Origin: Sphaerodactylus townsendi
Lineage: Eukaryota
DNA: 64,000 nt
Reading direction: 5' to 3'
Assembly: GCF_021028975.2 (NCBI RefSeq)
Contig: NC_059428.1
Location: 31,124,001-31,188,000 of the forward strand
Part shown: in pieces, positions 22,357 through 59,445 of the stretch
Layout: every line of letters begins with the position of its first letter
How positions within the stretch are numbered: position 1 is the first letter of the stretch
The notes under the pieces: model-generated
What the model was told of the DNA's origin: nothing
Seen by the model: the letters and a program-made list of their open reading frames with translations, nothing else
Databases searched by the model: none
Position numbers and translations under genes: made by a program

Positions 22357-22559
22357 ATACATAAATAAATCTTTTCTGCCTCATCTTATACCACAAACTA
22401 TCTATTCCGTCTGTTCTAGCTATGGTGGTCCATATATGCAATTGTTACTTGAGGTAACATCAATACAACAATTTTTAAAAAATTATCAGTGTGTAGTTAT
22501 CAGCTATTCCCACTGCATCTAAACCACCATGCCGGTTGACTTTACCCAATGCTTGGATA

Positions 22560-23100
22560 CAGCAGCTAAAAAATAATACACAAGAACTCCCCCCTCCCCC
22601 TGAGCTGTCATCACTGTTAACTAGCTTGGCATTCCCTTATCACCTGCTCACGCAGGCAGAATTAAAGAGAATTAGCTGTAAATCATGTAAAATTCATGTA
22701 CTTTTAAGGGAAACTGTTTGTTCTACTTAGAAATGCTCTTTAGAGAGAGTGTTTCGCATTAGGACACCAGCTAATGGTGCTCCCTGGAGAAGAATCAATT
22801 TGCTTTGCTTTTTATTGCTTGCTCACTCTGTTTGTCTGGCTTTGCTTCTTGGGCGAGTCACTGTCACCGCAAATGCATCGCCGTCAGCTTGGCATGAGCT
22901 GAATTTCAGAGACAACAGCTAAAGTGATTGGGTTTTATGGAGTAAGTGGTGTTTATAAGAACAGCCACCATCACCTGTTAAATCATTCTGTGCAGATAAC
23001 AGAGTGACTGGATGCTCTTGTTTGGAGGAAATGTACCCTCCTGTTGAAAGTAACAGAAAGTGAATAGGCTTTATTTTGCCAAAATTTCATGGAATTGTGT
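22560..23100 (+). promoter_or_regulatory. Candidate distal enhancer (Area IV-like)
   Basis: Non-repeat block upstream of the Area I-like element with FOX (TGTTTG, TGTTTAT), ONECUT (AATCAAT), GATA (AGATAA), Cdx/Hox (TTTTATGG) and TAAT motifs. Confidence 0.35.
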
Positions 23101-26759: not shown

Positions 26760-26935
26760 TAAAGATGTAGAGTCTGTCTCATGCTTGCTAATACAGTGCA
26801 TTTCCACTGTCCTCACAATATAATTGTTTTACTGCCCTTTCTGTTTATTTATCCATAAGGGGTGCTGCTGTTAAATGGCTTGGGAGAGCAATTGCTTAAT
26901 GGCTCAATATTAAATCAAATGCTCAGTGGCCTTTG
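26760..26935 (+). promoter_or_regulatory. Pdx1 Area I (PH1)-like enhancer
   Basis: TAATTGTTTTACTGCCCTTTCTGTTTATTTATCCATAAGGGGTGCTGCTGTTAAATGGCT closely follows my recollection of mammalian Area I. It carries a homeodomain TAAT site (26821-26826) and a FOXA site TGTTTAT (26842-26848). Confidence 0.65.
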
Positions 26936-27436
26936 GACAATATTGGTGGAGGGGAGGCTCCATCTTGGCACTGACCAGCCCTGGAGCTGCTTAACTTCAG
27001 CATGGTTTCTGCATCACAAGCCTGTAGCCCATAAACCTGTAAAACCTGAACGTACCACTCCTGGTCCACTCTTTGGCTGAGTGACATTGTTGGGAATGTA
27101 GTATTGGCACCTTCAAAGGTCTTCTCACCTATTTATTGATAATTTAGATTTACTAAACTGCCCACCCCCGAAGGGCTCTGGGCAGTGTACAATAAAATAC
27201 TTCAGTTAAAATACATCATAAAATTTAAAAGCCACAACAACCACCAATTTAACACAGACATCAGTTGGCGAACGCTCTATATCCCGAGAACAGGAAAAAG
27301 TATGACCCCTATCAGTGTAGGAGATGGCACCCATCAGCGGCTGTCTCCTCAAAATGCCCGGTGAAACAGCTCTGTTTTGCAATCCTGTGGAACTGTTCAA
27401 GTACCCGAATGGATGGAGGCAGAGTGTTCCATCAGG

Positions 27437-30620: not shown

Positions 30621-31039
30621 TAGTTCAGTAGTTAGATGCACCACATTGTTATAAGTTAATTCAGCCAATGCAATAACTCCAGCGCAACTGACTGGCTACT
30701 GTCTGAAGCAGGATGCTGGACTAGATAAACCACTGGCCTGATCCAGCAGGATTCTTCTTGTGTACATAGGGTCTTATCTATTTAGTATCTTACAGTTCCT
30801 CTGAACATTATTTTCTTGGGGGCAAACAATACCTGGCTGTCAGGTGCTGGAAGCAGGATAATGGAACTTGACATGATCCACTGAGAATTCTTGCTTTCTT
30901 TTCATCTGCAGAAATCTACTTCACTCAGTTAGAAGAAGCTAGACAGAGAATTGGGTGTCAAGGATTCTCAGCTATGGGATTTTGCTCTCCTGTGAGACTG
31001 AGAGAACTAGATATTGATGAGGAACAGTTGGCATTATGT

Positions 31040-31430
31040 GCAGCATAATTACTAAACAGAAATCTTTCCCAAGGCATCTGTTTATAAACATATTAGCAAA
31101 TCATTGGGTTTTGAGTAATTAAGTGATTGTGAAGTGACCCTTGGAAGAAATGGGAGTTATTGTGATCCAGTTTGGGATCTAGCTAGCTATGGAGCAGAAG
31201 ATAAGGCAGATTGATTGGAAAATGAGACACAGGAGAGAACAGCAAAAGTTGATTCTCAGCTTCCAAACTTATTTTCTTCCTTCTAGCTGCTCCAAGTTTG
31301 GCTCCTGTGATTTCCTGGGTGTCTCTCTCTGGTGTCCAAAGAGATCGGGAACCAGTGAAGCAAGTAGACGGGGGCTTAATTTTGAGAGAAAGGTGCAATT
31401 AGATGGTGAGTGCAAAGTCAACATGAACAG
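31040..31430 (+). promoter_or_regulatory. Pdx1 Area II-like enhancer block
   Basis: Core 31347-31424 GGGAACCAGTGAAGC...TGCAATTAGATGGTGAGTGCAAAGTCAACAT aligns with recalled mouse Area II and has a forkhead site GTCAACA at 31417-31423. The upstream part has palindromic TGTTTATAAACA and TAATTA sites. Confidence 0.5.
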
Positions 31431-31469
31431 TGTGCCTGAGTGAGAGAGCAGGAGCAAGTGAGACCAAGT

Positions 31470-31660
31470 AAGGGAAGTGATCTTTGTCCTTTGGGCTGCT
31501 TTCCGCCCCCTCATTGCCTTGTCACCAAGTCAACCAGACTCAGCTGGAAAGGAGCAGATTATTTATCTCCAGGGGTCAGTCCCTTTCAGGCTACCCAACT
31601 AGCTCCGGGCTAATCAATGCTCTCAGTACAATGAGCTTATTCACAGGTTCCAGGGCACAG
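31470..31660 (+). promoter_or_regulatory. Candidate Area III-like block directly after the Area II-like block
   Basis: Non-repetitive. E-box CAGCTG 31541-31546 and ONECUT-type AATCAAT 31612-31618. Its position matches the mammalian II-III order. Confidence 0.3.
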
Positions 31661-31978
31661 AAGGGAAAGGGATACTGAGGTGCAAGGCATCTGGCAAATG
31701 TATTGCTCCATCCCTCCATCTCTGTGTGTCTCTCTCTGCACTGGTGCATCATCCTGAGAAAATCACATGGCCAAATGGATACCCAGTTTGGGAGATGTTG
31801 GGGTATGCACAAATGTGACACTCTTTATGGTGCATCTCTGTATAAATCTGTATCCCAGATACAGCTGTTGCACCAAGATGTAAACTTTATTCACTTTATA
31901 TGCTGACTATGCAAAAGACTTAAGATCAGCATTGGTATATGAAGGGACATATTTAGAAGGCGATCTAAGAAATTCATG

Positions 31979-33826: not shown

Positions 33827-36800
33827 ATGAGGAAAGAGGACACCAATATGATAAATAAACATTAGGACTGTAGTTTATTTACCAACACTGGTCACATTGA
33901 ATCCCTGATACACAAGATTTCTTCTTTCTGCATAACATAGCATTTAACAGGAAGGAAATGCCACACTTAGTATATTACTTGCTTTAGTTTGTATGTTGAA
34001 CTGCCAGAGGGCAGTTCCCTCAAGTTCAACAGAATAGGGGAGAACCAAAAGGAGACTTCCAAAATGAATATTAGGCTCATGTGTTTAGATCCAGGGTCCA
34101 ATCTTATTTCTTTGTTCATTTATGTTATTTATAGTTTACTTCTCTCACTGACGTTCAAGTTGGTTTACACATTATAAATCAATGCAATCAACATTTAATA
34201 AGCACTGTAATAGGGCTAGGAATTGTAGAAATTTTGAAATGGAGCTGTCACTAGAGCAAAGCATAAGAAATAAGAATGACACATTAAACAATGCAGAACA
34301 TGGCATTACGTCAGTAGAACATAGTACATTTTCCTGGACCAATTGGTTGTGATTCAACCTATTTTAATCTGGCTACTAAGTTCCAGCTTTCTTCTCTGCA
34401 TTACTTTAGAGTAACTCTGACTTTAGGTTTGTAGAATACCCTTGGAGAGGATCATAAAGTAAGACAATCTCCTCTTCATTTGTCCTGTGATATTTAATGG
34501 GAGACCATGAGAAGTAAGTCAGTTGCGATGTATACATCCTATCCCTTCAGTCTATATAACCCTGCCCTATTTCTTGGTGCAACAGAGTGCAATGGCATAT
34601 TGGTAATTCTTTTAATTCCTTATCTGAAAATACAGAGAGCTGGTGTAAAAGAAGAAAAAGGCGTTCCAGGGGCATGGTGAGGGTGGGACGGGGGACGGGG
34701 TGGAGGACACACTGGTGCACCGGGTGCTTTCCCCCCTTGCTCCTCCTCTGTCAGGATCCCAACATAGCTGTGTACGATTAGCACTTTGGATGTTCAAATT
34801 CTAATAATTTATGGTGGAGGAAAGTTCCACCTAAAGCAACCAGTCAAGATAATTAAAATGTGTTTTAAGATTCTCTCTCTGGATGGTCAAATACATTCAT
34901 TCTCTTCTCCCTGTCTACCTTTGGTCTTTTCCTTCATATGCTCTCTTCACTTTACAATACTCTTGCTGCCTGATAAGACCCATCCTTAGTATTTCCTCTA
35001 CATTTCCCCCACTCTGGGTGTTCTACCTGCCTACACTCATTTGCATGATCTTCTCTGCTGCTTCTTTGAAAAATGCACATAGTGGTGAGAACCAACAAAT
35101 AGGCTGCAGAGAACAGAGTACAGACATGAAGCTTCAAGAGTGACTTCATGCTATTCACTCTTTCTCACCTGGTCTGCCTTGCAGGTTTGTTGTGAAGATA
35201 ACATGTGGAGGAGTGGACCATGTATGGCAAACCTGAGATTCTTAGAGGGATGGGCAGAATATAAGAGTGGGTCTGTGGCTCATGGGTAGAACATCTGCTT
35301 TGTGGGCAGAAGGTCCTCCTGGCATCTCCAGCTAAAAGTGTCAAGTAGGTGATGTGAAGGCAGCTTCATGCATTGAATACATAACATGAATGAAGATGTG
35401 AGCCCCTCCTTGCTCTGACTCTGTGCTGGGTTGTGATGGGATGCATGAAAAGAAAGGATTTACAGATGTTCACGTTTAGAGACTGACAGATGATGTTTGA
35501 ATACTAGGATTCAACAGGTGACAATTTTTGATGGAGCAAAGCTGTAGAGGGAAAGTATGAAATTGCATCGCAAAGCTTATGAACATCAGAAGAGCCCTGC
35601 TGGATCAGACCAGTGTCCACCTACTTTTTTCCAGGCTTGCGTGAGAGACCTTAACTTACTTCCTCTCAGACAGCGGGTTCAGTTTCCATTTGCATCTTTG
35701 GATGCTCTGATACTATTAAGAACAGTCACGTTCAGGGAACAAACCAGCCACACTTGAAACATTTTAAAGTTCAAAAATGCTTTCAGAACAAAATGACATT
35801 TCCCATTGAAACAAAAAGAGAGGTTCAAATGATCAAATTTGGTCGCCTTATTCTTTTTTCCCTAGTACGCAAAGTGTGTCTTGCATGTATAGTGGAAGAT
35901 TGAACTAAAGATGTCTTGGTTCCTGTGTGGAGCTACTCCACTGCATCACTTCCAGAAAGAAAAATTGATAAATAACCCTAAACAGGCCAAGATTCTGTCT
36001 CTGTCTAAAGCACAACTCCTCTAAAAAGGTGGTGGTGGTGGGAGAATATATTAGCTTGAGAAGCTCAATATGTCTGGTCTCCCCCATTTCTTCATCCCCC
36101 CAGTCTGTCCTTGCCTCTGATTCCATTTCAGCTCCCTCCACGACTCTGGATGAGATGACTGAACCTTCAGTCATCGAGAGTCCCACCTTCCCTCGAAGGA
36201 CTCTGCCCTTTCTCTCTTGCTGCTTCTGAGACTTGGGCCGATTCCCCATGGTCAATTACCTTGATGGAAAGGTGCAGTTTATTTTCAAACTTGGTTTGAT
36301 CTGAATAGGGAACTTATCCCATCAGCCTCTGTCAGCAGGTAGGGCTGATGGGAATTGTAGTTCCTGAACATCTGGAGAGAGCCGCAGGTTCCTGCAATTC
36401 CTGATCCTAAGATCAGGGTACAGGAACCTGCAGGCTCTCAGATGTTCAGGAACTACAATTTCCCATCAGCCTCTGTGTCCAGCAGGTAGGGGCTGAGTAG
36501 GGTGGATTCTAATTTCAGAGAAACCTGAGTCCTACAGATCTAGATTGAATTTCCTGGTGGGGATTTGGCCTGACTCAAGAAAGGATCTGAAATATTATTT
36601 GACTGTAGACATTTAAACTGGCATAAAGTCCCCACAAATATTAAGACTGCTGGTTCAGAAGAAACATCTAGTTTAAAAAGCAAAATATGCTGTGTCACAT
36701 TTATTGGTCCCAGCCAGAATGAATCATGAGCATGTAAAATTATCATTGTGAGGGATTTTCAGACATTTTAGCTTGATTGTGGTTTCTGTCAGTGATCCTC

Positions 36801-38839
36801 TAAAAAGGCTCGGCAGTGGAAAGTGGTATCAAGGGTTGCTGCTTCAGGAGTTGGGGCACTCTGGTCTAATTAAAGCAGTGGAATATGTTACCACTGGAGC
36901 TCCTTGCATCCAGCTGGTGTCAGATTCTCTCCTCCCTCACCACCCTTTCCAGAGACCTCTTAAGCACAACCTCATCTGTGGGACAGGCTTCTCCAGGAAG
37001 TGGCGGGCTCTCATTCTCTGGGGTTTTTTAAGCAGAGGCTGGATGTCCTTCTGACAGCAGGGCTGACTCTTAAGCAGACCGTGAGAGAGGGGACAGGAAG
37101 GGATATTGGCGCTGAGCTCTGATAGCCCTTTCTTACATGCCCAGGGTAATGCCAATCTCCACCTTGGGGTTAAGAAGGAATTTTCCTCCAGGCCACATGG
37201 TCCAAAGATCCTGGAAGGGTGTTTCTTTTAAACCTTCCTTGGGGATAGAGGAGGGATCACTGGAGTGGAGTGTGGGTGTTGTGAATTCCCTGTATTGGAC
37301 TAGATGGCCCTTTAAGTTCCCTCCAGCTCTGTTTTCAGGCAACAAAACTTGGAACAGCTGGTGTTCTCCCCCGTCTTTCTAACACCTTCCCTTCCCTCCT
37401 TGGTTCCTTGGTCCCCTTCTGTGTGTCAGACTAGGGACTGTAAGCTTCTGGGGCAGGTTGTGCGGATAACTCTGTAAAGCGCCCTTGCCTAACCAACAGC
37501 CAGCCGCCGCCACAGCAGCAACAACTGATACATTTTCTAGGCCAGAGCAAGATCCTACCTCTCCGGCTATCTGCCCCCATACACACAACTCCACAAAGAA
37601 CAATTCCACATTCAAATATTTGTGAATATATGGTCAATATTAGTAATAATTATGGGTTGTTGTGTATTTATTTAAATTTTGTTTTATGTTTAAGATATTT
37701 CTATTCACTTATATGAATAAAATGCTGCCTGGTAAGTAAACTGCTGACTTTTTGAAGGAAAGGTCTCCTTTCTGTTTGCAAGCAGAGCCTTGTGGTTGCA
37801 GGAACCGAGCGATAAGCCGTGTGTGGCCTTTCCTAATCTCTGGCTGATAGAATTCACCCGGGTCGACAGGTTTCCTAGGCCGGAGAGGTTTAAAATTCAA
37901 CAATCCTGGACACTTGTTGATTGAGCTTAAACAAACGCGAGGGGCGGCCGAGCGAGCCCCGCCACCTGCCCGGTTCGGAGGCCCGGGGACGCTCCCCTCG
38001 CCCCAGCCGGGAACAGACGGCCTTGGAAAGGGTTTCGGTTGGACTCTGGGAAGTCGCGAATTTGTTGGCACGGAGTCACAGGCATCCAGGAAGCCGGAGC
38101 GCCGACTCAGACGCCACCGCAGTCAGGACGTATCTCTCCATCCTACTGCTTTTGTACCCCTCCCTGGACCCGAGCAACCCAGGCCAGTTTACGCGGGTCT
38201 TTCCTCTCCTCCATCTTGTGCTCACAACAGCCCTTCGAGGTAGGTTAGGCTCAGAGATTAGAACTCTCCCTCACCGGCGAGCTTCGCGACTAGATATTTA
38301 CGCCCTGGTCCCTCCGGTAGCCCTAGATGGGAGCTGACCTCTATGGGGTATGAGTGGTAAATGGAGACACACACACACCCCAGCTAAGGGGCTTCCCTCC
38401 TTCCTTCCCTCCCTCCCTCTCTCTCTCTCTTATCCGTGTCTCTCCCTCTCGGGAAAACTTGGTCTGAACTGACAAGGTCGCGATTTCTGTTCTGATGAAC
38501 CAGTCTTATTTTGCAGGCCCTCAACCCTCATCTTGCTGTCCTCCCTGGAGAACTTTGTGTGTTGGAAAAGCACAGAATTTAAGTTAAATGCCAGATCTAA
38601 CTGAGGGCGAATTGCGGGTCGGACTGTCAAGAAATCGTTAGCCACGGAGTTCGGCAGTTAATTTATTTATCTTTTGTTAAAAGGAGCCAGGCTCAGCCCT
38701 GCATGGAAACCACCCCTTTTGACCAGAAGCTCCACCTGACAGACGCAGTTTATCAGAGAGTGTGACAAAGCACTTTGCACCTGCTCAGAAACGCTCTCGC
38801 TAGAAGTTTGATGTTTGCCCCATTCAGGCTGAGGCGGGC

Positions 38840-39146
38840 AGGTAGACTCCGGCCACGTGACGCGGGCGCATCCAATGCCAGAGGGCAACAGCAGAGCTGT
38901 GAGTACATTGTGAGGAAAGCGAAAGGACGTGGAGGGATCCAAGGTGCTCAAGAGCGCCTTCGTATTGGAAAGGCGCCGCCCAATGGGGACGGGAGCGCGC
39001 CTCACGTGGCCGGGCGGAGAGCCAATGAGAAAGCTCCCCCGGGAGGTTCTGGTCCTCGGGTCCATCCGCAAGTTGGGGCAGGCGAAGGGGACCTGTCAAA
39101 GGTGTCGCCCAGCCCGCGCCGAGTGCGTGGCTCGCCCGGACGCGCC
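38840..39146 (+). promoter_or_regulatory. PDX1: PDX1 proximal promoter/5'UTR in a CpG island
   Basis: E-boxes CACGTG at 38854-38859 and 39003-39008. CCAAT at 38872-38876, 38980-38984 and 39022-39026, ATTGG at 38964-38968. No TATA seen. The CCAATGG...CACGTGG...AGAGCCAATG layout resembles the USF-bound mammalian Pdx1 promoter (from recall). Confidence 0.8.
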
Positions 39147-39576
39147 ATGAACGCCGAGGACCAGTATTACGCCTCCAGCCAGCTCTACAAGGAGCCCTGC
39201 GCCTTCCAGAGGTCCCAGCCCCAGGACTACTCCCCGAGCCCCCCCGCCTGCCTGTACATGGGGCGGCAGCAGCAGCCAGCGCCGGAGCCCCCTTACCCCG
39301 GCGCCCTGGGGGGGCTGGAACAAGGCAGCCCGCCAGACATTTCTCCCTACGAGGTGCCCCCCATCACGGAAGATCCAGGCCTCTCCCACCTCCATCACCA
39401 CCCGCACCAGCATCCCCCCCACCATTATCCGCAGCTGCCTCACCCGCACCCAGAAGCTCTGCCCTTCGGAGACGGGATGGAGGCCGGCGCTCTGGAGGAG
39501 CCGAGAGCCCCGCTGCCTTTCCCGTGGATGAAGTCCACCAAAGCCCACGCCTGGAAGGGCCACTGGAGTGTCGCGG
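39147..39576 (+). CDS. PDX1: PDX1 coding exon 1 (transactivation domain and FPWMK hexapeptide)
   Basis: gccATGa start at 39147. Translates [22 protein letters not shown]...[11 protein letters not shown]...[13 protein letters not shown]...[15 protein letters not shown], matching the vertebrate PDX1 N-terminus. Ends at phase-1 donor G|GTAAGA (GT 39577-39578). Confidence 0.97.
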
Positions 39577-40272
39577 GTAAGACGCCTTCCTTCTTCCCTC
39601 TCTCGCTGGGCTGCCCCCACCCCGCTTCTCCTGGCCAGGTGCTGCTTTCAGGTGGCCGACGAGGGGCACCTGGCTGCCAAGGGAGGGGACCAAGCTGGCA
39701 CCCGCGCCAAGTCTCCAGTCTTGTCTCCTCGAAACGCATGCCCAGGCCCCAAGGAGATCGGCTTCTGCCAAGGGCGCTCAGGAGCTCCGGGGCTACACCT
39801 GGCCTGAACAGGTTTCCTTCCGTTTCCTATTAGCAGCGGCAGTTGGGGCCCCTTGGATGACGAGTCCAGTTTCAGGGGAGGGAAATGATTTCCATACATC
39901 GCAGAAGTGGACACACCGGGGGCTTTCTGAGCTCTTGTGCCTGTCTCACTGGCCGCAGGTGCGGTCCGGAAAAAGACCTGCAACACTCGGTGGTGGCGAT
40001 AGGAAGGGGCTGGAGGTTGGGGGGATTCGAACCCATCTTTTGTGATGTTTTACGGCAGGGAAATAAATCGGAACAGAACTAGAACGAGGACACGGAGGGC
40101 CATAAATGAACTCACCACGCTTGTTATGATATCAGCACCTTTTCCCAGGTAGGCGGACACCTGTTGGGAAAACAAAATCGAACAGTGTTAATTAGAAAAT
40201 TATCATAATCACCTCCATATTGTTATTAATAACTTCCTGGAGCACAGTGAAAGGAGGTGGATGTTTGACAGA

Positions 40273-40402
40273 GGCCCCTTCCGCACATGCAGAATAATTC
40301 ACTTTCAATCCACTTTGCAGCTGTATGGAATAGCAAAACCCACTTGCAAACAAGTGTGAAAGTGGATTGAAAGTGGATTATTGTTCATGTGCCGAAGGGG
40401 CC
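40273..40402. mobile_element. PIF/Harbinger-like MITE (family A)
   Basis: TIRs and TSD AGA. Confidence 0.8.
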
Positions 40403-40934
40403 AGAACCTAGGGGGATGGAAAGGTCTGCAAACCGGTGAATTAGTGGGTCTGAGGGAAGTTAAATCTGGATATAACCCCAAACACAAAAGGTCACAATTG
40501 CGGCCAAGATGGCAGTAGCCAATCTAGTTTGACTCACTCCAGCTCGCAAAGAGGTTCGTCGGGAGCAAGTCCAAGAAGCCGTTCCCCCTAAAGCGGTATA
40601 AACTTACCTGCTCACCCAGCAGTCCCCAGGGCGGCCTCCGCGGGTTTGTAATGCACACCTGTGGGCAAAGGTGCCCTGTTTCAATTAAGTCCTTCTTGTT
40701 TCTTTGAGATTGATTCCTGGGGAGTAGTTCTTCGCAGCCTTCTGGTTCTGATTTGCAACCTTTTGTAAGGAATAGAATCCGTGCTAACTTCTGAGCAAGA
40801 TCATTGGGATCTGGTCATTTTAAGAACAGGTGTTTTGATTAGTAACTGCCTCCGGCCGTGCTTTTCTTCCCTCAAAAGGAAACCTCGTTTTGCCTTCTGA
40901 AGTACAAATATATATATATATTTTATTTTTTGTT

Positions 40935-41046
40935 TGTTGTGGATTTTCCGGGTTGTGAGGCCGTCCGTTGTCTGGTGGTTTTAGGGCCACATAGCTCGGA
41001 AAACCCACAACAGTCAGTTGATTCCAGCCCTGAAAGCCTTCGACAA
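40935..41046. mobile_element. Penelope-like element, internally deleted (arms only)
   Basis: tgttgtggattttccgggttgtgaggcc / ggccacatagctcggaaaacccacaaca followed by gttgattccagccctgaaagccttcgacaa. Confidence 0.65.
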
Positions 41047-42041
41047 TGTACTTTTGAAAACTCAAATTCCCTTCTCATGAAATTCTGAAGGGGGTCTGTG
41101 GAGTCTGTTTCTCCCTCGTTTGCTTTCGATTGTAACAGGATCTGAACCCCCAAAAAATGCAACTATCTGCCTGCCATTCACTCAATTAGGTGCATAAAAT
41201 TACGTACTTAATTTGTTTATGTGGGAATTGAAAGGGGCAGAAAAATAATTATTTCCCACCTCACATTCAAAGGGTCCCGGAACCTCAATTCACCATTGAT
41301 TTAATTGCCTGTGCATTTAAACCAAGGGACAACGGGACCAGTAGTGCAGTCAAGTAGCAGTATTACCGAGATCTGCCTGGCAGAAACCCATTTCTGTGCA
41401 CTTACGCACACTCGTGAGTAAACCGTAGTGAACTCCATGGAATTTACTTTCGCTTAACCTTGCTCAGAATTGGCCTGTTTGGAAAAACAAAATCTGCTTT
41501 ACTTTCGCAAAAGCGCCATTGTTACGCATAACATACTGGTAGTGGGTAAATTCTGTGGAACTTTTGCTTTGGGTCGGACGGTTATTCATTCAGAAAGGAT
41601 CGCTGCCTTTCTCTCACTGACCTGGATTCAAATGAAAGAAAAGCGACCCCCTTAAAATGTGAAACACACCAGATGTATTAGTGGGTGTAAGTGTCACTTG
41701 CGTGAGAGTGTGAGACGATCCCCCTTTCATGCCAGACCCATTTGTGTTGAATTTAAATAAATATCCTCCTTCTATTTCACAGTGGGGCTGCCGGTAAACA
41801 AACAATTGGATGGCTGTTTTTCGGGATTAAATGATCCCCTGCTAATTTCAGGAGGCCTCACTCCCAAACGAGTGGATCCTAAAATTAATCTGGGTGCTCT
41901 GTCTGAGCCAGCTTTCAGGATCCACTGGTGTGGCCCGTGGGGTTTTGCTCACAAGTCTCCCCACAAGACTGGAAAGCAACCAGGGTGGAGCATGGATCCT
42001 CCATGTGCTTTTCAGCTCTGTGGAGCTTCAAGCTCTTTCTG

Positions 42042-42169
42042 GGCCCGTTCCGCACATTCAGAATAATGCACATTCAATCCACTTTCACAATTGTTTGAAA
42101 GTGGATTTTGCCATTCCGCACAGCTCCAAAGTAGATTGAAAGTGCATTATTCCGCATGTGCGGAAGGGC
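42042..42169. mobile_element. PIF/Harbinger-like MITE (family A)
   Basis: Same TIRs; TSD unclear. Confidence 0.75.
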
Positions 42170-43197
42170 AGGGCCCCGGTCTTGGGAGCGAGTTGGAGTA
42201 AACTGTGTGGGACAGAACTTCCTTCTCTCCGCAGAAATAACTGCACAGAGTGCAGGCCTGTGTATCTTTGTGCAGGCCTGTGGTTTCTTATGAAATTAAG
42301 GGGAAAGGCTGCGTGGGCATCTCTAACGTTCTTCAGTAATCCCTACAAGATCTTACAGAACAGATTTTGCCAGAAGAAAGGGCTTCTGGTGGCCACCGTA
42401 GACGTGGATCCGGATGCGCGCCTGTTCGTCCCGTCCCACGGAATGTGCGCGTTTGGCTTGCGCCTGGATATGCGCGTTCGCATGCAGAGCAACGAAACCG
42501 GATCATCGGCGTCCGTCGGTCACTTTGGTCCTCGGCTCGGTTATTTGGGATAGGGCTGGTTGATGCCGATGGATCCCAAGAGAATGGATTCTTCCAGAGA
42601 GAGCTGCTGGCGGGGCTTCCCGCAATTGTGATCGGCTCGCGGCCATTAAAACGCGCGCCGCAGGATCAGTGAAACAAACGCCATCCCGTCCCGTTGGGGT
42701 TTTCTCCCATTCTGAGTGGTTTTGAACTCAGAGCAGCCGGAATGAAGAACATGAGGGGGGCGGGGGAAGGGGTGTGTGAGTTTCACACACTGAATTCACA
42801 AGCCCAGTCGTTGCCTGCCCTAGGTTGACACCGTGGCGTGTCACTTTCTCTTTGTGCGTGTGAAGAAGAGACGCGTCGGGTCTCTGTTTTAATTTGGCAC
42901 TAAACCTATTCCAAAGCTCCCGGAAGGTCAGGAAACCAACCAATGTAGCCACTTTAGAAACCGGTGCAGAGCAAACGGAGGCTGAAGCCCCAGCGGGTTG
43001 GCTTCCTTCTTGAATCCTGTGGGGCTTACTTCTGAGTAAACATCGGATGATCCCCTGTTGCTATTTCTGGTTTTATGATAACTGGTTAGTTACTTATGAT
43101 TGCTGATGTTTTATATTGTGATGATGTTGTTGTTCCCCTCCCTGGGCCCCACGGAGGAGGGCGGGATATAAATCAAAAAATGAAATATAAATAGATA

Positions 43198-43314
43198 GGC
43201 CCCTTCCGCACATGCAAAATAATGCGTTTTCAAACCACTTTCACAACTGTTTGCAAGTGGATTTTGCCATTCTGCACAGCTTCAAAGACCATTGAAAGCT
43301 GTTTGAAAGTGCAT
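43198..43314. mobile_element. PIF/Harbinger-like MITE (family A), runs into an assembly gap
   Basis: Left TIR and body match the 23134 and 47499 variant. Confidence 0.75.
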
Positions 43315-43476
43315 NNNNNNNNNNNNNNNNNNNNNNNNNNNNNNNNNNNNNNNNNNNNNNNNNNNNNNNNNNNNNNNNNNNNNNNNNNNNNNNNNNNNNN
43401 NNNNNNNNNNNNNNNNNNNNNNNNNNNNNNNNNNNNNNNNNNNNNNNNNNNNNNNNNNNNNNNNNNNNNNNNNNNN
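43315..43476. other. Assembly gap
   Basis: Run of N starting inside a hairpin MITE. Confidence 0.99.
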
Positions 43477-44522
43477 CTTAGAGACCTGCAAGATTTTGGG
43501 GGCATAATCTTTTGAGACTCAAAGCTGCGCTTTGGTTGGAAACACCCCCATCTTGCTGGTCTCTAAGGTGCCACTGCACCCAACCTGAGTATTCATTCTC
43601 TTGCAGACCAACCCGGCTACCGTCTGCAACCGAGGCAGGACGAGGCCTTCTTCCCTCGAGACTGGGGTGCCTCGTAGTGGGTACGGGCTACTGTCCTCCT
43701 TGTCCTCCGGAGGGGACAAGAGTCAAGAAGGCCCAGTTTGGTGGGGGGGGGGGGCTGCGGGAACGAGGCACTCTCCTGGAAGCGCCGTTGGGGAAACAAC
43801 CCTTCTGTCTGCGGTTGCACAATGTTATCGGAGCCAGCGTTTGGCATGCTCTGGGTCACGCCTTTCTGCAAATATTGCGCGACGGACATTGTTCAGCTAG
43901 ATCGCAGAAATAACGGGGGGGGGGGGGCTTATAAATGTATTTCTGGGGTTACAAACGGAGACCAGCCCATCCCAAAGCTCGGGGGTTGGTGGAGGGAAGG
44001 GACCCAGGCGACGTCATTCTCTGGATCCAACAAAACTAAGCCTAGACACAGACCAGAAAGTGAAAGCCCTGGCAGGATAGCAAACCAGCACCCCTGACCC
44101 TCTAGTACAGATATGGGATTTAGGACACAGAAGAGGCCTCGCTTCTGTGCCCTTTCTATGGAAGGGACCTGCAGAAGGGTCCCAACGGATACCCACTTCT
44201 GGAGGGTAAGTCCTGTAGAATCCGGCGGTGACCTTTCCTGGCGAGTACATGGTGCCCAGCTTGGACGCCATTTCGTTAGATCTGGGAAGCTAAGTAGGGT
44301 CGACCCCATCAGCACTTTAGATTCGAGGTAAGGCAACCGATTTGCGGGGGGGCGGGGGCGGGATGTAATATGTTCTGAAAACTGCAGTTTCTCTTTAGAG
44401 CGAAGACATCAAAATCCCTCAGCGCACGATGTTTATCACGTGGGTGGGTGTGTTAACTTGCGTGGAAGGAGTTTAACGCCCCAGTTTTAACGTGGATAAT
44501 TGAAAGCAACTGTTTTAATTGA

Positions 44523-44678
44523 GGCCCCTTCCACACATGCAGAATAATGCACTTTTAGTCCACTTTCAAAGTGTGCGGAATAGCAAAATCCACTTACTGT
44601 GCGGAATAGCAAAATCCACTTGCAAACAATTGTGAAAGTGGATTGAAAGTGCATTATTGTGCATGTGTGGAAGGGGTC
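44523..44678. mobile_element. PIF/Harbinger-like MITE (family A)
   Basis: TIRs, TSD TGA, and an internal duplication of gtgcggaatagcaaaatccactt. Confidence 0.8.
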
Positions 44679-45732
44679 TGAGTCTGGTCGAGAGCCAGGA
44701 AGAGGCCCAGAGGGGTCTTGCGCTGCATCGAGATTTTCCCAGAAACCATTTGAACATCTGATGCGCTTTCTAGGGTGGATTCCGCACAGCATATTTATAT
44801 CGAGTTGCAATCGTTACAAATGGACTTTTGGTGTTTCCATTTTGTAGCTGTCAGGTAGTTTTTTCTATTTGATAGTATTTGATGACTGACATATTTTACT
44901 GTTAGATATCTTGGTTGCTATTGAGGTTTCACATCTGATCCCGTCGGAGACCCGCTAATTTCAGCATCAGTGGGTTTAGACTGGAGCAACTACGCATCGA
45001 ATCGCACTGCCAAGCACTTACAAACTCTCACCTTCAAAATGCACGTCTGAAATTTGATTTTTTTAAAAAATAAAAACAACTCAAAATCTCAGCGGCAATA
45101 GCTGAAATGGTTGCCAAAGTTTCGATAACTGCACGTCTTCATTTTTGTCCCAGTCCTAACTTTGTCTGCTTTAAGCCCTCAACTGCCTGAAGGAAAACAA
45201 CGTCGGTCGGTGGAACAATATTTCAAAAACGAAAGTTTCGCATCAGTTCCTGACCTTGAAAGTTAACCGACTGTGCAGCGCTAACTCATAAGTGCCCGTT
45301 ACCTGGGCAAGCCCCCGCCAATCTTCCCCCACCCCCCAACCTGAATTTGGTGATCAGCATCTATTGGTGAACTAGCGATATGCATTTAATTTTCCAGGCA
45401 AGGTTCTTCAAGGCGCAGTCCTGACCACACGTATAAGGAAATAAGTCCAACTGAACTCAGGAAGATTTACTTCTGAGAAAAGATATCTGCGCTATGACAG
45501 TCACTTTGTGGCACTGGTCATTTTCAGTTGATTTCCATAAATATGCAGAAGATGCTTATTTTAGACTGCGTCTCCAGGAACGATGAATGAAAAGCAAAAT
45601 CCAGAAAGCAATTGATACCAATCGCTGCCTGGCATAGGTTACAACACAGCCCAAGGCTGAGGAACTTATTTATCCCATTTTGGGGAAGAAACTCGGAGAA
45701 GGGATTCACCCATGCTCGAGTTTCTTGGCTCT

Positions 45733-45850
45733 GGCAGATTCTGCATGGGCCAAAAACAGCGGTGTGAAAGTGGTATAAACCCTTTTAAACAGTTTTATAC
45801 CATTTTACACTGTTTTCACACTGCTGTTTTTGGACCATGCAGAATCCGCC
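45733..45850. mobile_element. Palindromic MITE (family B)
   Basis: TIRs GGCAGATTCTGCATGGGCCAAAAACAGCGGTGTGAAA / TTTCACACTGCTGTTTTTGGACCATGCAGAATCCGCC. Confidence 0.7.
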
Positions 45851-46609
45851 CCTGAGATTTTGAAGGAACACTTCACATTTCGAGAGTCAGTCAGACCTAG
45901 TGGCTGGAGGAGACACAAGTTGTCCTCCCCACTCTGCTGAGGAAGCCTCCGCACTCCCAAACTCTCAACCTTTCCTACCTCACAGGGTTGTTGGTGGATA
46001 AAATGGAGACAAGGAGAGCAATGTAAGCTACTTTGGGTCCCTTTGGAGAGAAAGGTGGGGGTATGAATGAAGTAAATTAGTAATATAATATGTTAATGTA
46101 GTTCTCCAACACTGATAATGTCCTCAGGGCAAGGCACATTTGCTCATTCCCATAAAATCTGTAAGCATGGTTATGTATAGGTTACAGGCAGAACTACACT
46201 GCTGGACACTCTGGTTTACTCACCATATAATGCGTGGTTGATCCCACAGAGATGAAAGGTGTTGACTCCAAAAAAGTATCTGAGGTAAATGTATTAACTT
46301 GCAGTTCACTGATGATTATGTGTTAATACATAATCCTTAATCCTTCAACAGCAATCATGTTTGTCATATATACAGACATATTTTAGTGGGATTTCCCACA
46401 GGAAATGTATACAATATGAGTGATATATATGCTTCCTTAAATGTTCTGTTATACATCAGCTAAGGAGCTGTGGCCAAACTGGATCGTAAGTTTCCAGGAT
46501 TTACCAGTGGCTGATGTGCACTAATAAAAACAGCTTTACTGGGGCAGGCTGTTCACAGGAGCTCATAACATCACATCCATAAACTTGCATTGAATTCAGA
46601 GAGATCTGA

Positions 46610-46707
46610 GGCCCCTTCTGCACATGCAGAATAATGCACTTTCAATCCACTTTCACCATTGTTTGCAAGTGGATTTTGCTATTCCACACAGTATCCAGCT
46701 GCCAAGT
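46610..46707. mobile_element. Truncated family A MITE abutting the Penelope-like fragment
   Basis: Left TIR and body only. Confidence 0.7.
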
Positions 46708-46734
46708 GAGTAACAAACTTCCCTCTGTGATACA

Positions 46735-46775
46735 CCTCTGAAGATACCAGCCACAGATGCAGGCGAAACGTTAGG
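46735..46775 (+). ncRNA. Minimal type I hammerhead ribozyme motif in the PDX1 intron (Penelope-like fragment 46708-46825)
   Basis: CCT-CTGAAGA-T-ACC...GGC-GAAACGTT-AGG. Palindromic stem III, one stem II mismatch. Predicted cleavage after GUU (46772). Confidence 0.55.
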
Positions 46776-47498
46776 AACAAGATCCACCAGACCACGGCCA
46801 CACAGCCCGGAAAACCCACCGCAATAAGGCTAGGTTTTGTTTCTTAAGTCTTTTATCTGGTTCAAATAAATGGAAAAGTTATTGGGATTAATACAAGTGT
46901 TAGGAAAGGAATGAAATAAATGGTACTTACTTATGAGTAATGCACACTCAATCGCTTTCCAATGCTGTGCCCCTTAGTGTGAAGCAGCTCTTCTATTAGA
47001 TGATATTGGTGAACAGATAGTGGGATACTGATAATATCTGATCATGGAAAATTGGTTCCCAATATGAACCAGGATCAATGGCTGATCAGTGGTGTTGTTT
47101 TTTTAAATTTTACATTTGTATGCCTTCTTCAGAGGAATTTGGTGTAGTGCACATAGTTTTTTCCATTGTATGCTCACAACAGCCTTATAAAGTAGGCTAG
47201 ACTGACCAGGAATTATTTGACTAACATCGTCCAGAAAGAAATTCAGGGATATAAACCTGGTTCTAGTGCTGCACTCTAACCTCAACACAAGATTGTCTCT
47301 TTTTTAAAAAAGCACAACTCAAACTAAGATGTAATCCAGCCAAACGTACTGTTAATTTAACCTTCATAATATTCCGGCTGAATCCTGTATTCCTGCAATC
47401 TTCAGATACTTATTATTTGACTAAGGAAGCTTTGACTCCCAGAGCTTATACCTTGAAAATCTAGTTGGTCTTTAAATTGTTACTGGACTTGAATCTTA

Positions 47499-47639
47499 GG
47501 CCCCTTCCGCACACGCAAAATAATGCGTTTTCAAATCACTTTCACAACTGTTTGCAAGTGGATTTTGCCATTCCGCACAGCTTCAAAGAGCATTGAAAGC
47601 AGTTTGAAAGTGCATTATTCTGCATGTGCAGAATGAGCC
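47499..47639. mobile_element. PIF/Harbinger-like MITE (family A variant)
   Basis: TIRs and TSD TTA. Confidence 0.8.
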
Positions 47640-47749
47640 TTAGTCTTCTATGGCAGACCAATACTACTACTCCGCCTACAATTGCCTAGTACAGACTGTC
47701 TGTGTTGCTCTGTACCTGACTCTACTATGTAATTCTTGCACCCTTAGAT

Positions 47750-47885
47750 ATTGAGTGGTGGTTTGCCATTGCCTGCCTCTGCCTCCCAACCCTTGAACTT
47801 CCTTAGTGGTCTCGCATCTAAACGCTGCGAGGGACCACCCCTGTTTAGCTTTTGAGATCGCGCTAGGCTGGACTATTCCGGTCAT
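47750..47885 (-). mobile_element. 5S-rRNA-headed SINE remnant (related pieces near 19140-19230, 26950-27005, 44270-44315)
   Basis: Reverse strand reads gatctcaaaagctaaacagggg…gatgcgagaccac, similar to the 5S internal control region. Confidence 0.45.
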
Positions 47886-49458
47886 GCTGTGTATTCAAAC
47901 ATATACGCACAAATGGTGGAGACATGAGCACACACATGCGTGTAAATGTATGTGTATACATTATATTTATTATTTATCGAATTTATTATACCGCCCACCC
48001 TCAAAGGGCTCACATATGCTCATATACTCACATATGTGTGCATGTTTATTTACACACGCACATCGACGCTTCTGCTATACTGTTGTAAAGGGATAGCGGT
48101 CTGAGCGTGCCCTAGCAGAATAAAACAATAGTCCAGTGGGATTCTAAAGACTAATGTTTGTTTCAGTATGAGTTTTCATGAGTAATCTTCTTCAGGTATA
48201 GGTGAAGGGGAAATCATCTTGGGAAATCTTATGGGGAAGGTTACGATATATATATGTAAAATATATATATAAAAATATCCTACCCCATACACGGACCAAG
48301 CTGCAGTCAAAGGCAAAACCTTTTTATGTCTGCTGGCGTTTAAGTCTCGGTAAGAGAATTCAGTGAATGTCAGTCCGTGAACTTCATTCCCCGGTGAAGA
48401 AAGGTTACCTGCGCGGCCGTGAAACATAAGGAGGAGCCAGTTCTGGGAGTGAGCCCCTTGGGACGCGAGGAAACCTGAACTAGCGGATTGGAAGGTTTCG
48501 CTCCGGGGGTCTCCTCGAGCTGCGGCCGAAGGGGTTTCAGAGCCCTTCCAATGGCGAGCGAGGCCACCAGATCTGGTGCTCTGATCCATCGGAACCGGAA
48601 AGCTTCAAAAAATTCTGAAGTCCGCAGTCCGGATGCAAATGTCAAGAAAATAGAAAAAGAACTCTCAAGGGGCCAAATCCGCAGTCCAGATATGAGCTGA
48701 AATTATTTCTGAGTCCACTGGATAGGACAACACCAGCAACGCCTGGTCTACCAGGAGAGTCCTCTACCACATGGCGCTTGGTCTTTTCGCTCCGGGAGAG
48801 AAATTTGCCTGGAAGAAGCCGTGCCTATTTGGGGTTCCAGCCGCCCAAGACTACTTTCTCGTCAAAAAGACACTGCGGGGCTGGGGGTGGTGGTTGGGGG
48901 TGGGGTGGGGGAGCAGAGATTCAGAGGGCTGATACTCTGGCTCCCCTCTCTTTTAGCTTTTGATGGTTCTGCAGCTCGCTTCGCCTCAGATGGTTCCCCA
49001 GCCAGAGCGCAGCGCAGTCAAGGGAACGGGTTCGGGACGTGGGTCCCTCCGGAGCCTCTGGTTCGTGCCCCCCTCCCTGATCTCAGGCCACATCCCTGCT
49101 CCACCGCTTGGGTTCTTTTCCCGCTCGCTCTCCGGAGCTCCTTCTGTTACGACTCTCTTCCTGTGTATTGGAGGGAAGGTTTCCGCTTTGACTGTCCCAA
49201 GCCCCGTCCGATGCCTTTTTGGAGTACTGTGGGGGTGCCCAGGGTGGAAGTCAGGAGGAGGTCCACAAACCTTTTTCAAGCAGCGATCCTCACAGCACTA
49301 AGGCGGCTGATCTTTGGGCTTCATCTTCTACCGCAAGCAGATGGCAGTCTTCTTTGGGGAGGGCCATCCATCTGGTCAGCCGCAGCCCATTGGCAGTGGT
49401 CATACTTCTCCTGAAGGGAAGTGTTCCTTTGTAAAACTCCTGGAGGAGGAGGAGTTGT

Positions 49459-49700
49459 CTGTTGTGGGGTTCCCGGGCTGTGGCCCTGGTCTGGCGGTTT
49501 TCACGCCTCCCGTTTTTCTCTGGCTGGCCTCTTCAGAGACAGGTCCCGGTAAGACGTGTCTCTCCCGGTGCCTCTGAAGGTGCCAGTCATAGATGCGGGT
49601 TGGGAAAACCCTTAGGAGCAAAAACTACCAGACCATGGTCATACAGCCCGGAAAAACCACAACAGCCGGTTGATTCCTGCCCTGAAAGCCTTCCACAACA
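49459..49700. mobile_element. Penelope-like inverted-repeat element, hammerhead core degenerate
   Basis: Arms ctgttgtggggttcccgggctgtgg / catacagcccggaaaaaccacaacag. Core is CTGAAGG with a disrupted GAAAC. Confidence 0.7.
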
Positions 49701-50601
49701 CGCACGCAAGGACGCACGCACTCACACACAATAAGTTACATTGGCTAGAATGAAAAAGCACCCTAGTGTATAAATCGGTAGATTTTGTAAAAGTGTTATT
49801 TTGCCCCCGGACTCTTTTCTGTTTACATAAAATAACTCACACATTCAGCGACACCTGTGGGGTCATTTCTTATTGCCTTTTTTGCCATTTCCCCCTCCCC
49901 TACAAAGTGCAAGAGGCTAACGCGTTGACCCCAAGAAAAAGAAATAATGTTTTTTAGATGTAACCTTTCCCATTGCTATCTGTGGGTTTCCAGAAATTCG
50001 AGAGTCTTCTTACCAAGTAAGTAATCCCGTTTAGCTGCAAAGAAACTGGCCCTGAGAAATTTCGGTTCCAGCCATCAGTAGTCCACTAATTTACTTTGGT
50101 TTGCTGTCAGTGGGCTACAAAATGGTGTGGAAATTGAGTGGAGGATGGAGGATTTCCCCGAAGACAGGTCCGGAAGGCGTTTTGTTTTGGAAACCAAACG
50201 CATCTCAATGGTACTGAATTGAAACGCGACACTCCATTGAAACGCGACACTCCATTGAGAAGTCACTCCCCCCCACCCCCAGTGTTTATGAACATCGTAT
50301 TTTTTTTTCTGTTGGCGTGCATGTGTGGTTTTGTGTCCCATTTCAATTTCCAGATTTTGCATTATCAGCTGGATTCCCAAACAAGTTTGCCCAAAGTGTT
50401 TAGGACAGGATATGTCCAGGGTTAAATGCTTTAAAAAATAATTTCAGTGACAGAAACCAGAGCCAAATTAAAAATCTCACTGCCACTCGAATTCCCAACA
50501 TAGGAAGTCGCCCTTTTCTGCTTTGTTACCTACCAGTTTAAAATGTATGAGCGGGCAGCTGTCAGAAACCCAACATTTCAGGCTGCAGTCTTATACGTTT
50601 T

Positions 50602-50734
50602 TCCGCACATGCAGAATAATGCACTTTCAATCCACTTTCACAATTGTTTACAAGTGGATTTTGCTATTCCACACAGTAAAATCCAGCTGCAAAGTGCATT
50701 GAAAGTGCGTTATTCTGCATGTGCGGAAGGGGCC
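50602..50734. mobile_element. PIF/Harbinger-like MITE (family A)
   Basis: Same body; left tip eroded. Confidence 0.75.
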
Positions 50735-51224
50735 TCAGACCTGAAAGCCCAGGAGCTGAACAGAATAGATTCCAGGAGGCATGAGCCCACAGCTTCAACT
50801 GCAGGATAAAGCAAACAATAACAATCATAATTTAACAAAATCACAGATCTTCAGCAACTGCTGACCTTCATACATACTGCCTTCTTCCCAAGAATCTAGC
50901 ATGTCCTAAAGTACTCCAGCAGTATGTTTATTTTATGATTTTATTATTATTTTATTTCATGTATACCCCACCAATCTCCTGGAGGACTTAGGGCAGTTTA
51001 CAAATAATCCAAGCAATGTCACCTTTTGTAATTGAGAGATATATACTCAAGATATATGGTACTGCCCAAGATTTCGGGGGGGCGGGGTTAATGTTGCATC
51101 ACATTTGCAAGACTGGAATAATTTGTAGTTTCCAGTCTTAGTGGAGACTTGCTGATGACTGCTACAAAATATTAGGGGGAGGGTTTAAACCCAGTGGGAG
51201 TCGTGCAGTCGTGGAATGGGCTAC

Positions 51225-55810: not shown

Positions 55811-55950
55811 GTCCCCTTCTGCACATGCAGAATAATACACTTTCCATCCACTTTCACAATTGTTTGCAAGTGGATTTTGCTATCTGCACAGCCACAAAGT
55901 GGATTGAAAGTGGGTTGAAAGTGCATTATTCTGCATGTGCTGAAGGGGCC
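55811..55950. mobile_element. PIF/Harbinger-like MITE (family A) inside the Copia integrase region
   Basis: Same TIRs. Confidence 0.75.
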
Positions 55951-59074: not shown

Positions 59075-59445
59075 GTGGCTCCTACGCGGTGGAGCCGGAG
59101 GAGAACAAGCGGACGCGGACGGCCTACACGCGCGCGCAGCTGCTGGAGCTGGAGAAGGAGTTCCTCTTCAACAAGTACATCTCCCGGCCGCGGCGCGTGG
59201 AGCTGGCCGTGCTGCTGAACTTGACCGAGCGCCACATCAAGATCTGGTTCCAGAACCGCCGCATGAAGTGGAAGAAGGAGGAGGACAAGAAGCGAGGAGG
59301 CGCCGCAGGCGGCGGGAGCGGCCGGGAACCGGAGCAGGACTGCGCCGTCTCCTCGGGGGAACTGATGGCCAAGGACGAGGCGGGCGAGGAGCGGCTGCCC
59401 ACCAGCCCCACCGCCTCCTCTCCCCAGCCCCCGGCGGCCCGGTGA
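59075..59445 (+). CDS. PDX1: PDX1 coding exon 2 (homeodomain and SPOP/PCIF1-binding C-terminal motif)
   Basis: Branch-point-like CTAAC 59051-59055, pyrimidine tract and CAG acceptor ending 59074. Encodes [60 protein letters not shown] (Xlox-type ERHIKIWFQ) and [15 protein letters not shown] stop at 59443-59445. Frame joins exon 1 (430+371=801 nt, 266 aa). Confidence 0.98.

What the first reader, a model, noticed from the sequence alone, without database searches (positions are those of the whole stretch)
31347..31424. Apparent Pdx1 Area II orthologue in a reptile, though Area II is usually called mammal-specific
Seen: GGGAA-CCAG-TGAAGC-AAGT-AGACGG-GGGC-TTAATTT-N11-TGCAATTAGA-TGGTG-AGTGC-AAAG-TCAACAT, downstream of an Area I-like block. 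Recalled, not verified: mouse Area II reads about GGGAA-TAAA-TGAAGC-GTCG-AGATGG-AAGC-CAATTT-N11-TGCAATTAGA-CCAGA-AGTGC-TAAG-CAAACAT, so the two are colinear with one indel and keep the homeodomain-type AATTAG site and a forkhead site (GTCAACA). Established: Area II drives beta-cell Pdx1 expression and is described as absent from chicken and non-mammals. Inference: it may be an ancestral amniote enhancer lost or eroded in birds.
Basis: partly seen in the sequence, partly recalled or inferred. Interest (0 to 1): 0.8.

Follow-up and report, generated by a model that had tools for sequence, protein, structure and literature searches.

The report
Gecko copy of Pdx1 Area II
A short conserved stretch 7.8 kb upstream of the gecko Pdx1 gene is a true counterpart of the core of the mouse "Area II" pancreatic enhancer, so this enhancer, still widely called mammal-specific, is old, is kept in lizards and alligator, and has decayed in birds.

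Summary
The window is the Pdx1 locus of the gecko Sphaerodactylus townsendi, with the ATG at 39147. The string at 31347-31424 is present as described. It lies at about -2076 to -2000 from the mouse start site, inside Area II, and it ends in the published FOXA2 site.

A profile built only from mouse, platypus and Xenopus Area II finds one significant place in the 64 kb window. That place is 31319-31434, with E about 1e-6. It also finds the same block in Rhineura, Eublepharis, alligator and, degraded, a turtle. It finds nothing in macaw or duck.

The block sits where Area II should: after Area IV (22615-22836) and Area I (26771-26955), and just before Area III (31471-31625). It is 83% identical between gecko and amphisbaenian, while the sequence just upstream of it does not align at that stringency.

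Only the 3' core is shared, meaning the forkhead site and the AATTAG site. The two large-Maf sites that work in mouse are seen only in the two mammals.

Novelty is moderate. Mulley and Holland (2013) already found Area II in frog and coelacanth, but could not find it in Anolis. Function in reptiles is inferred, not shown.

The parts
31347..31424 (+). Counterpart of the Pdx1 Area II core (the finding itself). This is the best local alignment to mouse Area II, L003 7835-7911.
   Evidence: z = 7.7, 0 of 1000 shuffles
31319..31434 (+). Extent of the profile match to the mouse, platypus and Xenopus Area II model. The 5' 28 bases have low alignment confidence.
   Evidence: E = 1.1e-6 and 2.8e-7
31394..31403 (+). 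TGCAATTAGA, a homeodomain-type ATTA core. It is identical in Sphaerodactylus, Rhineura, platypus, mouse and Xenopus. It differs by one base in alligator and in Eublepharis, and is lost in the turtle.
31417..31423 (+). GTCAACA, a forkhead-type site at the position of the mouse FOXA2 site GCAAACA. It reads GTAAATA in platypus and alligator, GCAAATA in Xenopus and GTCAATA in Rhineura.
   Evidence: the published mouse FOXA2 oligo of the PH2/Area II domain is in PMC3807017
31471..31625 (+). Counterpart of the 5' part of Area III. It is shared with all nine other species, both birds included.
26771..26955 (+). Counterpart of Area I. Gecko 26786-26904 is 81% identical to mouse Area I, E = 3e-23.
22615..22836 (+). 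Counterpart of Area IV. It is 76% identical to mouse L003 3968-4166 (about -5943 to -5745 from the start site), E = 6e-37. It is also shared with turtle, alligator, platypus, macaw and duck.
39147..39576 (+). Pdx1 coding exon 1, from the ATG to a G|GTAAG splice donor.
59075..59445 (+). Pdx1 coding exon 2, which holds the homeodomain. The limits are approximate.

Best explanation
Window 31347-31434 is the gecko counterpart of the 3' core of the Pdx1 Area II enhancer. It lies in a conserved upstream array, in the mammalian order Area IV, I, II, III, that has been stretched to 7.5-16.5 kb from the Pdx1 ATG. The orthology is shown here. The function is inferred: the block probably works as a FoxA-dependent enhancer module for Pdx1. 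A forkhead factor would bind the GTCAACA site at 31417-31423, and a homeodomain-type factor the AATTAG site at 31394-31403. The module would act together with Area I and the adjoining Area III to drive Pdx1 in pancreatic endocrine cells. It lacks the two large-Maf sites (B2 and B4/5) that give MafA/MafB input in mouse. The core dates back at least to the frog-amniote ancestor. It is kept in squamates and alligator, degraded in the one turtle examined, and decayed beyond recognition in the two birds.
For: Locus identity: exon 1 is 100% identical to a Sphaerodactylus townsendi protein, and the next hits are Pdx1 of other geckos.

The mouse partner lies in Area II. The only PstI and BstEII sites in the mouse region fall at -2918 and -1927 if the start site is 90 bases upstream of the ATG. 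This matches the published PstBst fragment of -2917/-1918, and a Maf-type TGCTGA site falls at the published B2 position of -2124. That puts the mouse block at -2076 to -2000, inside both published definitions of Area II. Its 3' end is the published FOXA2 oligo of the PH2 domain.

Homology: the profile from mouse, platypus and Xenopus gives the window E = 1.1e-6, alligator 3e-20, Rhineura 4e-8, turtle 4e-6, Eublepharis 1.5e-5, and no hit in the birds. Shuffle tests give z = 7.7 for the gecko, 10.5 for Rhineura, 18 for alligator, 6.5 for turtle, and -1.2 and -1.4 for the birds. Gecko against platypus Area II by blastn gives E = 1e-9.

Order: Areas IV, I, II and III are colinear with mouse.

Constraint: gecko and Rhineura are 83% identical over 31347-31625, and in the word-7 search the alignment starts exactly at 31347. 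The forkhead and ATTA sites keep their positions. One- and two-base indels among the squamates and a blank Rfam search argue against a coding or known-RNA reading. Contigs from related organisms in several studies hold the stretch, so it is not an assembly artefact.
Against: No functional data exist for any reptile, so binding and enhancer activity are inferred from mouse. Identity to mouse is only 60%, and a plain +1/-1 blastn did not find the match. The squamate forkhead site has C where other species have A at the third base. That this still binds FoxA rests on my recollection of the HNF3 consensus TRTTKRY and was not tested. The functional mouse Maf sites are absent, so beta-cell selectivity may differ. 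The ATTA core is broken in Eublepharis. Iguanians, snakes and tuatara were not sampled, and a published search failed to find Area II in Anolis.
Confidence: 0.85

Rival explanations
1. The block is orthologous to Area II but does a different job in reptiles. Without the Maf sites it may simply be the upstream end of one Area II-III unit. That unit would drive broad early pancreatic, duodenal or gastric Pdx1 expression rather than endocrine or beta-cell expression.
For: In sauropsids and frog the block runs almost straight into the Area III block, with a 40-50 base gap. The MafA/MafB sites B2 and B4/5, through which beta-cell-enriched control works in mouse, are seen only in mouse and platypus.
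Against: The FOXA2 element that is functional in mouse Area II keeps its position. Birds keep Area III but have lost this block, so the two can evolve apart.
Confidence: 0.12
2. The similarity is chance or convergence of short factor-binding motifs.
For: Identity to mouse is 60%, and the shared runs are short.
Against: The profile gives E = 1e-6 with a single hit in 64 kb. None of 1000 shuffles reached the observed score. The position between Area I and Area III is the same in eight species. Alligator and platypus bridge the sequence gap, each at 68-70% identity to both gecko and mouse.
Confidence: 0.01
3. The block belongs to Area III, or to a spacer, and not to Area II. On this reading, calling it Area II is a matter of labelling.
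For: It lies only about 50 bases from the Area III block, and the best plain blast hit to mouse in this region is the Area III anchor.
Against: The mouse partner maps to -2076 to -2000, inside Area II by both published definitions. That numbering was checked against the PstI and BstEII sites and the B2 site. The partner also contains the published Area II/PH2 FOXA2 oligo.
Confidence: 0.02

Closest known systems
Mouse and human Pdx1 Area II (PH2) enhancer, mouse -2153/-1923 (Gerrish 2000; Samaras 2002; Vanhoose 2008, PMC2504898)
   Same: The position is the same, between Area I and Area III upstream of Pdx1. The 3' core is colinear over about 78 bases. The forkhead site sits at the place of the mouse FOXA2 site, and the TGCAATTAGA motif is identical.
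   Different: It lies 7.8 kb from the ATG, against 2.1 kb in mouse. The 5' third of mouse Area II, with the Maf sites B2 and B4/5, has no recognisable counterpart. The forkhead core reads GTCAACA instead of GCAAACA. No activity data exist.
Area II-like sequence reported in Xenopus tropicalis and coelacanths (Mulley and Holland 2013, PMC4471637)
   Same: It gives the same conclusion, that Area II predates mammals. The Xenopus block found here (L005 7769-7841) aligns with the gecko block.
   Different: That study could not find the element in chicken or in Anolis, and left open a loss across all reptiles. Here it is found in three squamates and an alligator, which places the loss after the split between birds and crocodilians. 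Their alignments are images, so I could not check that their Xenopus block is the same one.
Pdx1 Area III (bound by Ptf1a; Wiebe 2007)
   Same: It is the neighbouring conserved block, at 31471-31625, and is shared by all ten species.
   Different: Area III is kept in birds, while the Area II core is not. The two blocks map to different mouse coordinates.

Membership tests
Pdx1 Area II enhancer (orthology) | Lies upstream of Pdx1, between Area I and Area III, in the same orientation | tested here: met
   Area I is at 26771-26955, the block at 31347-31434, Area III at 31471-31625 and the ATG at 39147. The order is the same in alligator, turtle, platypus, mouse and Xenopus.
Pdx1 Area II enhancer (orthology) | Significant sequence homology to the mouse Area II interval (-2153/-1923) | tested here: met
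   Profile E = 1.1e-6, the only hit in the window. HOXD70 z = 7.7 with 0 of 1000 shuffles reaching it. The mouse numbering was checked with the PstI, BstEII and B2 positions.
Pdx1 Area II enhancer (function) | FOXA2 (HNF3beta) site | tested here: inconclusive
   A forkhead-type heptamer sits at the homologous position in every species except the turtle. The mouse site is the published oligo. The squamate variant GTCAACA fits the HNF3 consensus only by my recollection, and binding was not tested.
Pdx1 Area II enhancer (function) | Large-Maf (MafA/MafB) sites B2 and B4/5 | tested here: not met
   TGCTGA and TGC-N8-GCA occur at the B2 and B4/5 positions only in mouse and platypus. Neither occurs within 130 bases upstream of the block in the three squamates, alligator or turtle. 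The alligator profile match starts only at the core.
Pdx1 Area II enhancer (function) | Pax6 binding | not tested
   The paper that defines the site (Samaras 2002, PMC133887) is not held, so I had no site sequence to compare.
Pdx1 Area II enhancer (function) | Beta-cell-selective enhancer activity and nuclease hypersensitivity | not testable with these tools
   This needs reporter assays and chromatin data from reptile pancreas. No RNA run holds the stretch.

The most novel reading that the evidence does not exclude
What is specific to mammals is not Area II but its 5' large-Maf module (B2 and B4/5). That module was added in the mammalian stem to a much older FoxA plus homeodomain core, one that frogs, squamates and crocodilians still carry. 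Birds let the core decay in place into GC-rich sequence and run Pdx1 without it. Squamates fixed an A-to-C change in the forkhead core about 200 million years ago, and this may have altered which factor binds.
Probability: 0.45. Interest if true: 0.6.

Novelty: new member of a known kind. Interest (0 to 1): 0.5.

Why it matters
Area II is the Pdx1 enhancer most tied to beta-cell formation and maturation. Its supposed restriction to mammals appears in paper titles and in recent reviews. Finding the core in lizards and an alligator, but not in two birds, turns a story of mammalian gain into one of ancient origin followed by loss in birds. It also separates an old FoxA/homeodomain core from Maf sites that may be mammalian additions. 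That offers natural variants for reporter and replacement experiments on how beta-cell Pdx1 expression is built. The advance is limited, because the pre-mammalian origin was already reported in 2013.

Tried and rejected
- Plain blastn (+1/-1, word 7) and a +1/-1 local alignment of gecko against mouse found only the 26-base Area III anchor. A profile and HOXD70 scoring were needed to find Area II.
- Three look-ups gave no DNA: Mus spicilegus Pdx1, Trichosurus, whose file was too large, and Sceloporus. No marsupial or iguanian was therefore sampled, and the published negative result for Anolis could not be re-tested. All 12 look-ups are used.
- Five papers are not held: Yang 2017, Samaras 2002, Wu 1997, Wiebe 2007 and Hunter 2013. 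The Vanhoose supplement is not held either. The Mulley and Holland alignments are images.
- Mouse Area IV taken at -6529/-6047 gave no hits. The conserved part lies at about -5943/-5745, inside the alternative -6200/-5670 definition.
- A stronger profile from all eight positive species, and the alligator block alone, still found nothing in macaw or duck; the best E-values were 5.8 and 10.
- A coding or RNA reading was rejected. There are only short ORFs, and they are broken by indels between species. There is no Rfam match above threshold.
- A repeat-family reading was rejected, because the element is single-copy in the window.
- Laid contigs of relatives show the stretch in several studies. 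The list of differences was cut short, so I drew no substitution rates from it.
- Operator rules: no human or primate contig was fetched. The N runs were left alone. The two Pdx1 exons were handled separately by reference, and the joined coding sequence was not searched.

Full report
**What the locus is.** The window encodes Pdx1 on the + strand. An open frame at 38775-39833 contains the typical Pdx1 N-terminus starting at 39147. The homeodomain exon lies near 59075-59445. Exon 1 was searched by reference, with the region option. It is 100% identical to a protein of the gecko Sphaerodactylus townsendi, and the next hits are Pdx1 of other geckos, lizards, turtles, birds and mammals. The finding at 31347-31424 therefore lies 7.8 kb upstream of the Pdx1 ATG. 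The two exons were handled separately, and the joined coding sequence was not searched.

**Check of the observation.** The string is in the window exactly as quoted. I fetched Pdx1 loci with 10 kb of upstream flank for nine species:
- mouse (L003)
- platypus (L007)
- Xenopus tropicalis (L005)
- alligator (L006)
- a turtle (L002)
- macaw (L004)
- mandarin duck (L009)
- the gecko Eublepharis (L001)
- the amphisbaenian Rhineura (L008)

No human or primate contig was fetched.

**Is the mouse partner really in Area II?** Published coordinates count from the transcription start, not the ATG. If the start site lies 90 bases upstream of the ATG, three landmarks fall into place. The only PstI and BstEII sites in the region land at -2918 and -1927, matching the published PstBst fragment of -2917/-1918. 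A Maf-type TGCTGA site lands at -2124, the published position of block B2. The mouse partner then spans -2076 to -2000. That is inside Area II both as -2153/-1923 and as -2139/-1958. Independently, its 3' end is the oligo published as the FOXA2 site of the PH2/Area II domain, and the ChIP primers of that paper bracket the block (PMC3807017).

**Is the match more than chance?** Plain blastn and a +1/-1 local alignment of gecko against mouse found only a 26-base anchor in Area III. More sensitive tests were needed, and all agree.
- **Profile search.** An nhmmer profile was built from mouse, platypus and Xenopus Area II only, with Area III excluded. It was run against the whole window plus six other loci, on both strands. 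The results are in the table below.
- **Shuffle test.** Its z-score was 7.7, and 0 of 1000 dinucleotide shuffles reached it. The same test on other species is in the table.
- **Bridging species.** Gecko against platypus Area II by blastn gives E = 1e-9, and platypus against mouse Area II gives 5e-23.
- **Block identity.** Identity of the gecko block is 60% to mouse, 68% to platypus and to alligator, and 79.5% to each of the other two squamates.

| Species | Profile E-value | Shuffle-test z |
|---|---|---|
| Sphaerodactylus (window) | 1.1e-6 at 31319-31434; next window hit E = 5 | 7.7 |
| Alligator | 3.3e-20 | 18 |
| Rhineura | 3.7e-8 | 10.5 |
| Turtle | 4e-6 | 6.5 |
| Eublepharis | 1.5e-5 | not run |
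| Macaw | no hit | -1.2 |
| Duck | no hit | -1.4 |

**Context.** The gecko carries the whole mammalian array in the same order:

| Element | Window position | Support |
|---|---|---|
| Area IV | 22615-22836 | 76% to mouse, E = 6e-37 |
| Area I | 26771-26955 | 81% to mouse, E = 3e-23 |
| Area II core | 31347-31434 | as above |
| Area III | 31471-31625 | shared with all nine other species |

The Area I counterpart is 4.4 kb away from the finding, not adjacent to it. Between gecko and Rhineura the word-7 alignment begins exactly at 31347 and runs to 31625 at 83% identity. A word-9 search extends it only weakly into the flanks: 67% over 31276-31849. These two lineages split deep in squamate history, roughly 200 million years ago by general knowledge. 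This is the clearest sign of purifying selection. The element is single-copy in the window. It has no Rfam match above threshold. It carries one- and two-base indels between squamates that rule out a coding reading. Contigs of related organisms from several studies hold the stretch, so it is not an assembly artefact.

**What is conserved and what is not.** Two motifs keep their positions.
- **The homeodomain-type motif.** TGCAATTAGA at 31394-31403 is identical in Sphaerodactylus, Rhineura, platypus, mouse and Xenopus. It differs by one base in alligator and in Eublepharis.
- **The forkhead heptamer.** It sits at 31417-31423. It reads GCAAACA in mouse (the FOXA2 site), GTAAATA in platypus and alligator, GCAAATA in Xenopus, GTCAACA in both geckos and GTCAATA in Rhineura.

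The turtle has lost both motifs, although its block is still detectably homologous. The two large-Maf sites through which MafA and MafB act in mouse (B2 and B4/5) occur at their positions only in mouse and platypus. They are absent from the three squamates, the alligator and the turtle, and Xenopus has a TGCTGA elsewhere. The alligator profile match begins only at the core. So the shared element is the 3' core of Area II, not all of it.

**Birds.** Macaw and duck keep Areas IV, I and III. The 445 and 318 bases between Area I and Area III contain no assembly gap. They are 66-69% G+C, and in duck they are partly a GGA microsatellite. Neither a profile from all eight positive species nor the alligator block alone finds anything there. 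The interval is about as long as in alligator (334 bases). This suggests decay in place rather than a clean deletion, but that is an inference.

**How it most likely works.** The orthology is shown. The mechanism is inferred from mouse. A FoxA factor would bind the forkhead site, and a homeodomain-type factor the AATTAG core. The block would cooperate with Area I and the adjoining Area III to raise Pdx1 transcription in pancreatic endocrine cells. That GTCAACA still binds FoxA rests on my recollection of the HNF3 consensus TRTTKRY and of the TATTGAC site of the transthyretin promoter. It was not tested. Without the Maf sites, beta-cell selectivity may be weaker or achieved differently. The main rival reading is that in non-mammals the block is simply the upstream end of one Area II-III unit with broader activity.

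**Comparison with what is known.** Area II is called the only mammal-specific Pdx1 control region in primary papers and in reviews up to 2024. Mulley and Holland (2013) reported Area II in Xenopus and coelacanths. They could not find it in chicken or Anolis, and suggested a loss in birds or possibly in all reptiles. A full-text search found no other paper that mentions Pdx1, Area II and reptiles together. The new points here are three:
- the core is present in three squamates and an alligator;
- this places the loss after the split between birds and crocodilians;
- the Maf module, rather than Area II as a whole, may be what is mammalian.

One possible reason for the negative Anolis result is that the array lies 7-9 kb upstream in the three squamates examined, far outside the 2-3 kb where it sits in mammals. 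This is speculation. I could not fetch an iguanian locus to test it.

**Verdict.** This is a new member of a known kind: the counterpart of a known enhancer in lineages where it was thought to be absent. Interest is moderate, because the pre-mammalian origin was already in print and because function in reptiles remains untested.

Noticed in passing
window 22545-22927: This is a deeply conserved block shared with turtle (79%), alligator, platypus, both birds and mouse. It corresponds to Pdx1 Area IV. The conserved part in mouse lies at about -5943/-5745, which fits the -6200/-5670 definition better than the -6529/-6047 one.
   Followed up: partly
window 39577-59074: The single Pdx1 intron is about 19.5 kb long. 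It spans about 4-6 kb in mouse, turtle, macaw and platypus, judging from the gene spans in the fetched loci. It is also long in Eublepharis (about 15 kb), Rhineura (about 19 kb) and Xenopus (about 25 kb). An N run lies inside it at 43315-43476 and was left untouched.
   Followed up: no
window 31417-31423 and the same site in L001 and L008: All three squamates have C at the third base of the forkhead core, where the other species have A. This creates CAAAGTCA, which loosely resembles a nuclear-receptor (HNF4-type) or Maf half-site. The change has been kept since the squamate ancestor. Its effect on binding is unknown.
   Followed up: no
window 30679-30768 and 35577-35618: These are copies of a dispersed repeat. 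Each also matches two places upstream of Rhineura Pdx1, so it is probably a squamate SINE-like family. Such insertions may account for part of the stretching of the enhancer array.
   Followed up: no
L004 8663-9107 and L009 9923-10240: In macaw and duck the interval where Area II should lie is 66-69% G+C. In duck it holds a GGA microsatellite. A faint, non-significant resemblance to the alligator block remains around a GAGAGGAGG stretch.
   Followed up: partly
L002 8254-8343: The turtle block has lost both the ATTA core and the forkhead site, and it abuts a GT microsatellite. Only one turtle assembly was examined.
   Followed up: no
window 38814-39146 (protein P0001): The public Sphaerodactylus townsendi protein that matches exon 1 starts about 330 bases upstream of the conserved Pdx1 ATG and has no homeodomain Pfam hit on record. 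The gene model for this species looks wrong.
   Followed up: partly
window 37756-37996 and 38907-39146: These are proximal promoter blocks conserved with Rhineura (79% and 73%) and with the turtle. They are the likely core promoter and proximal control region of Pdx1.
   Followed up: no
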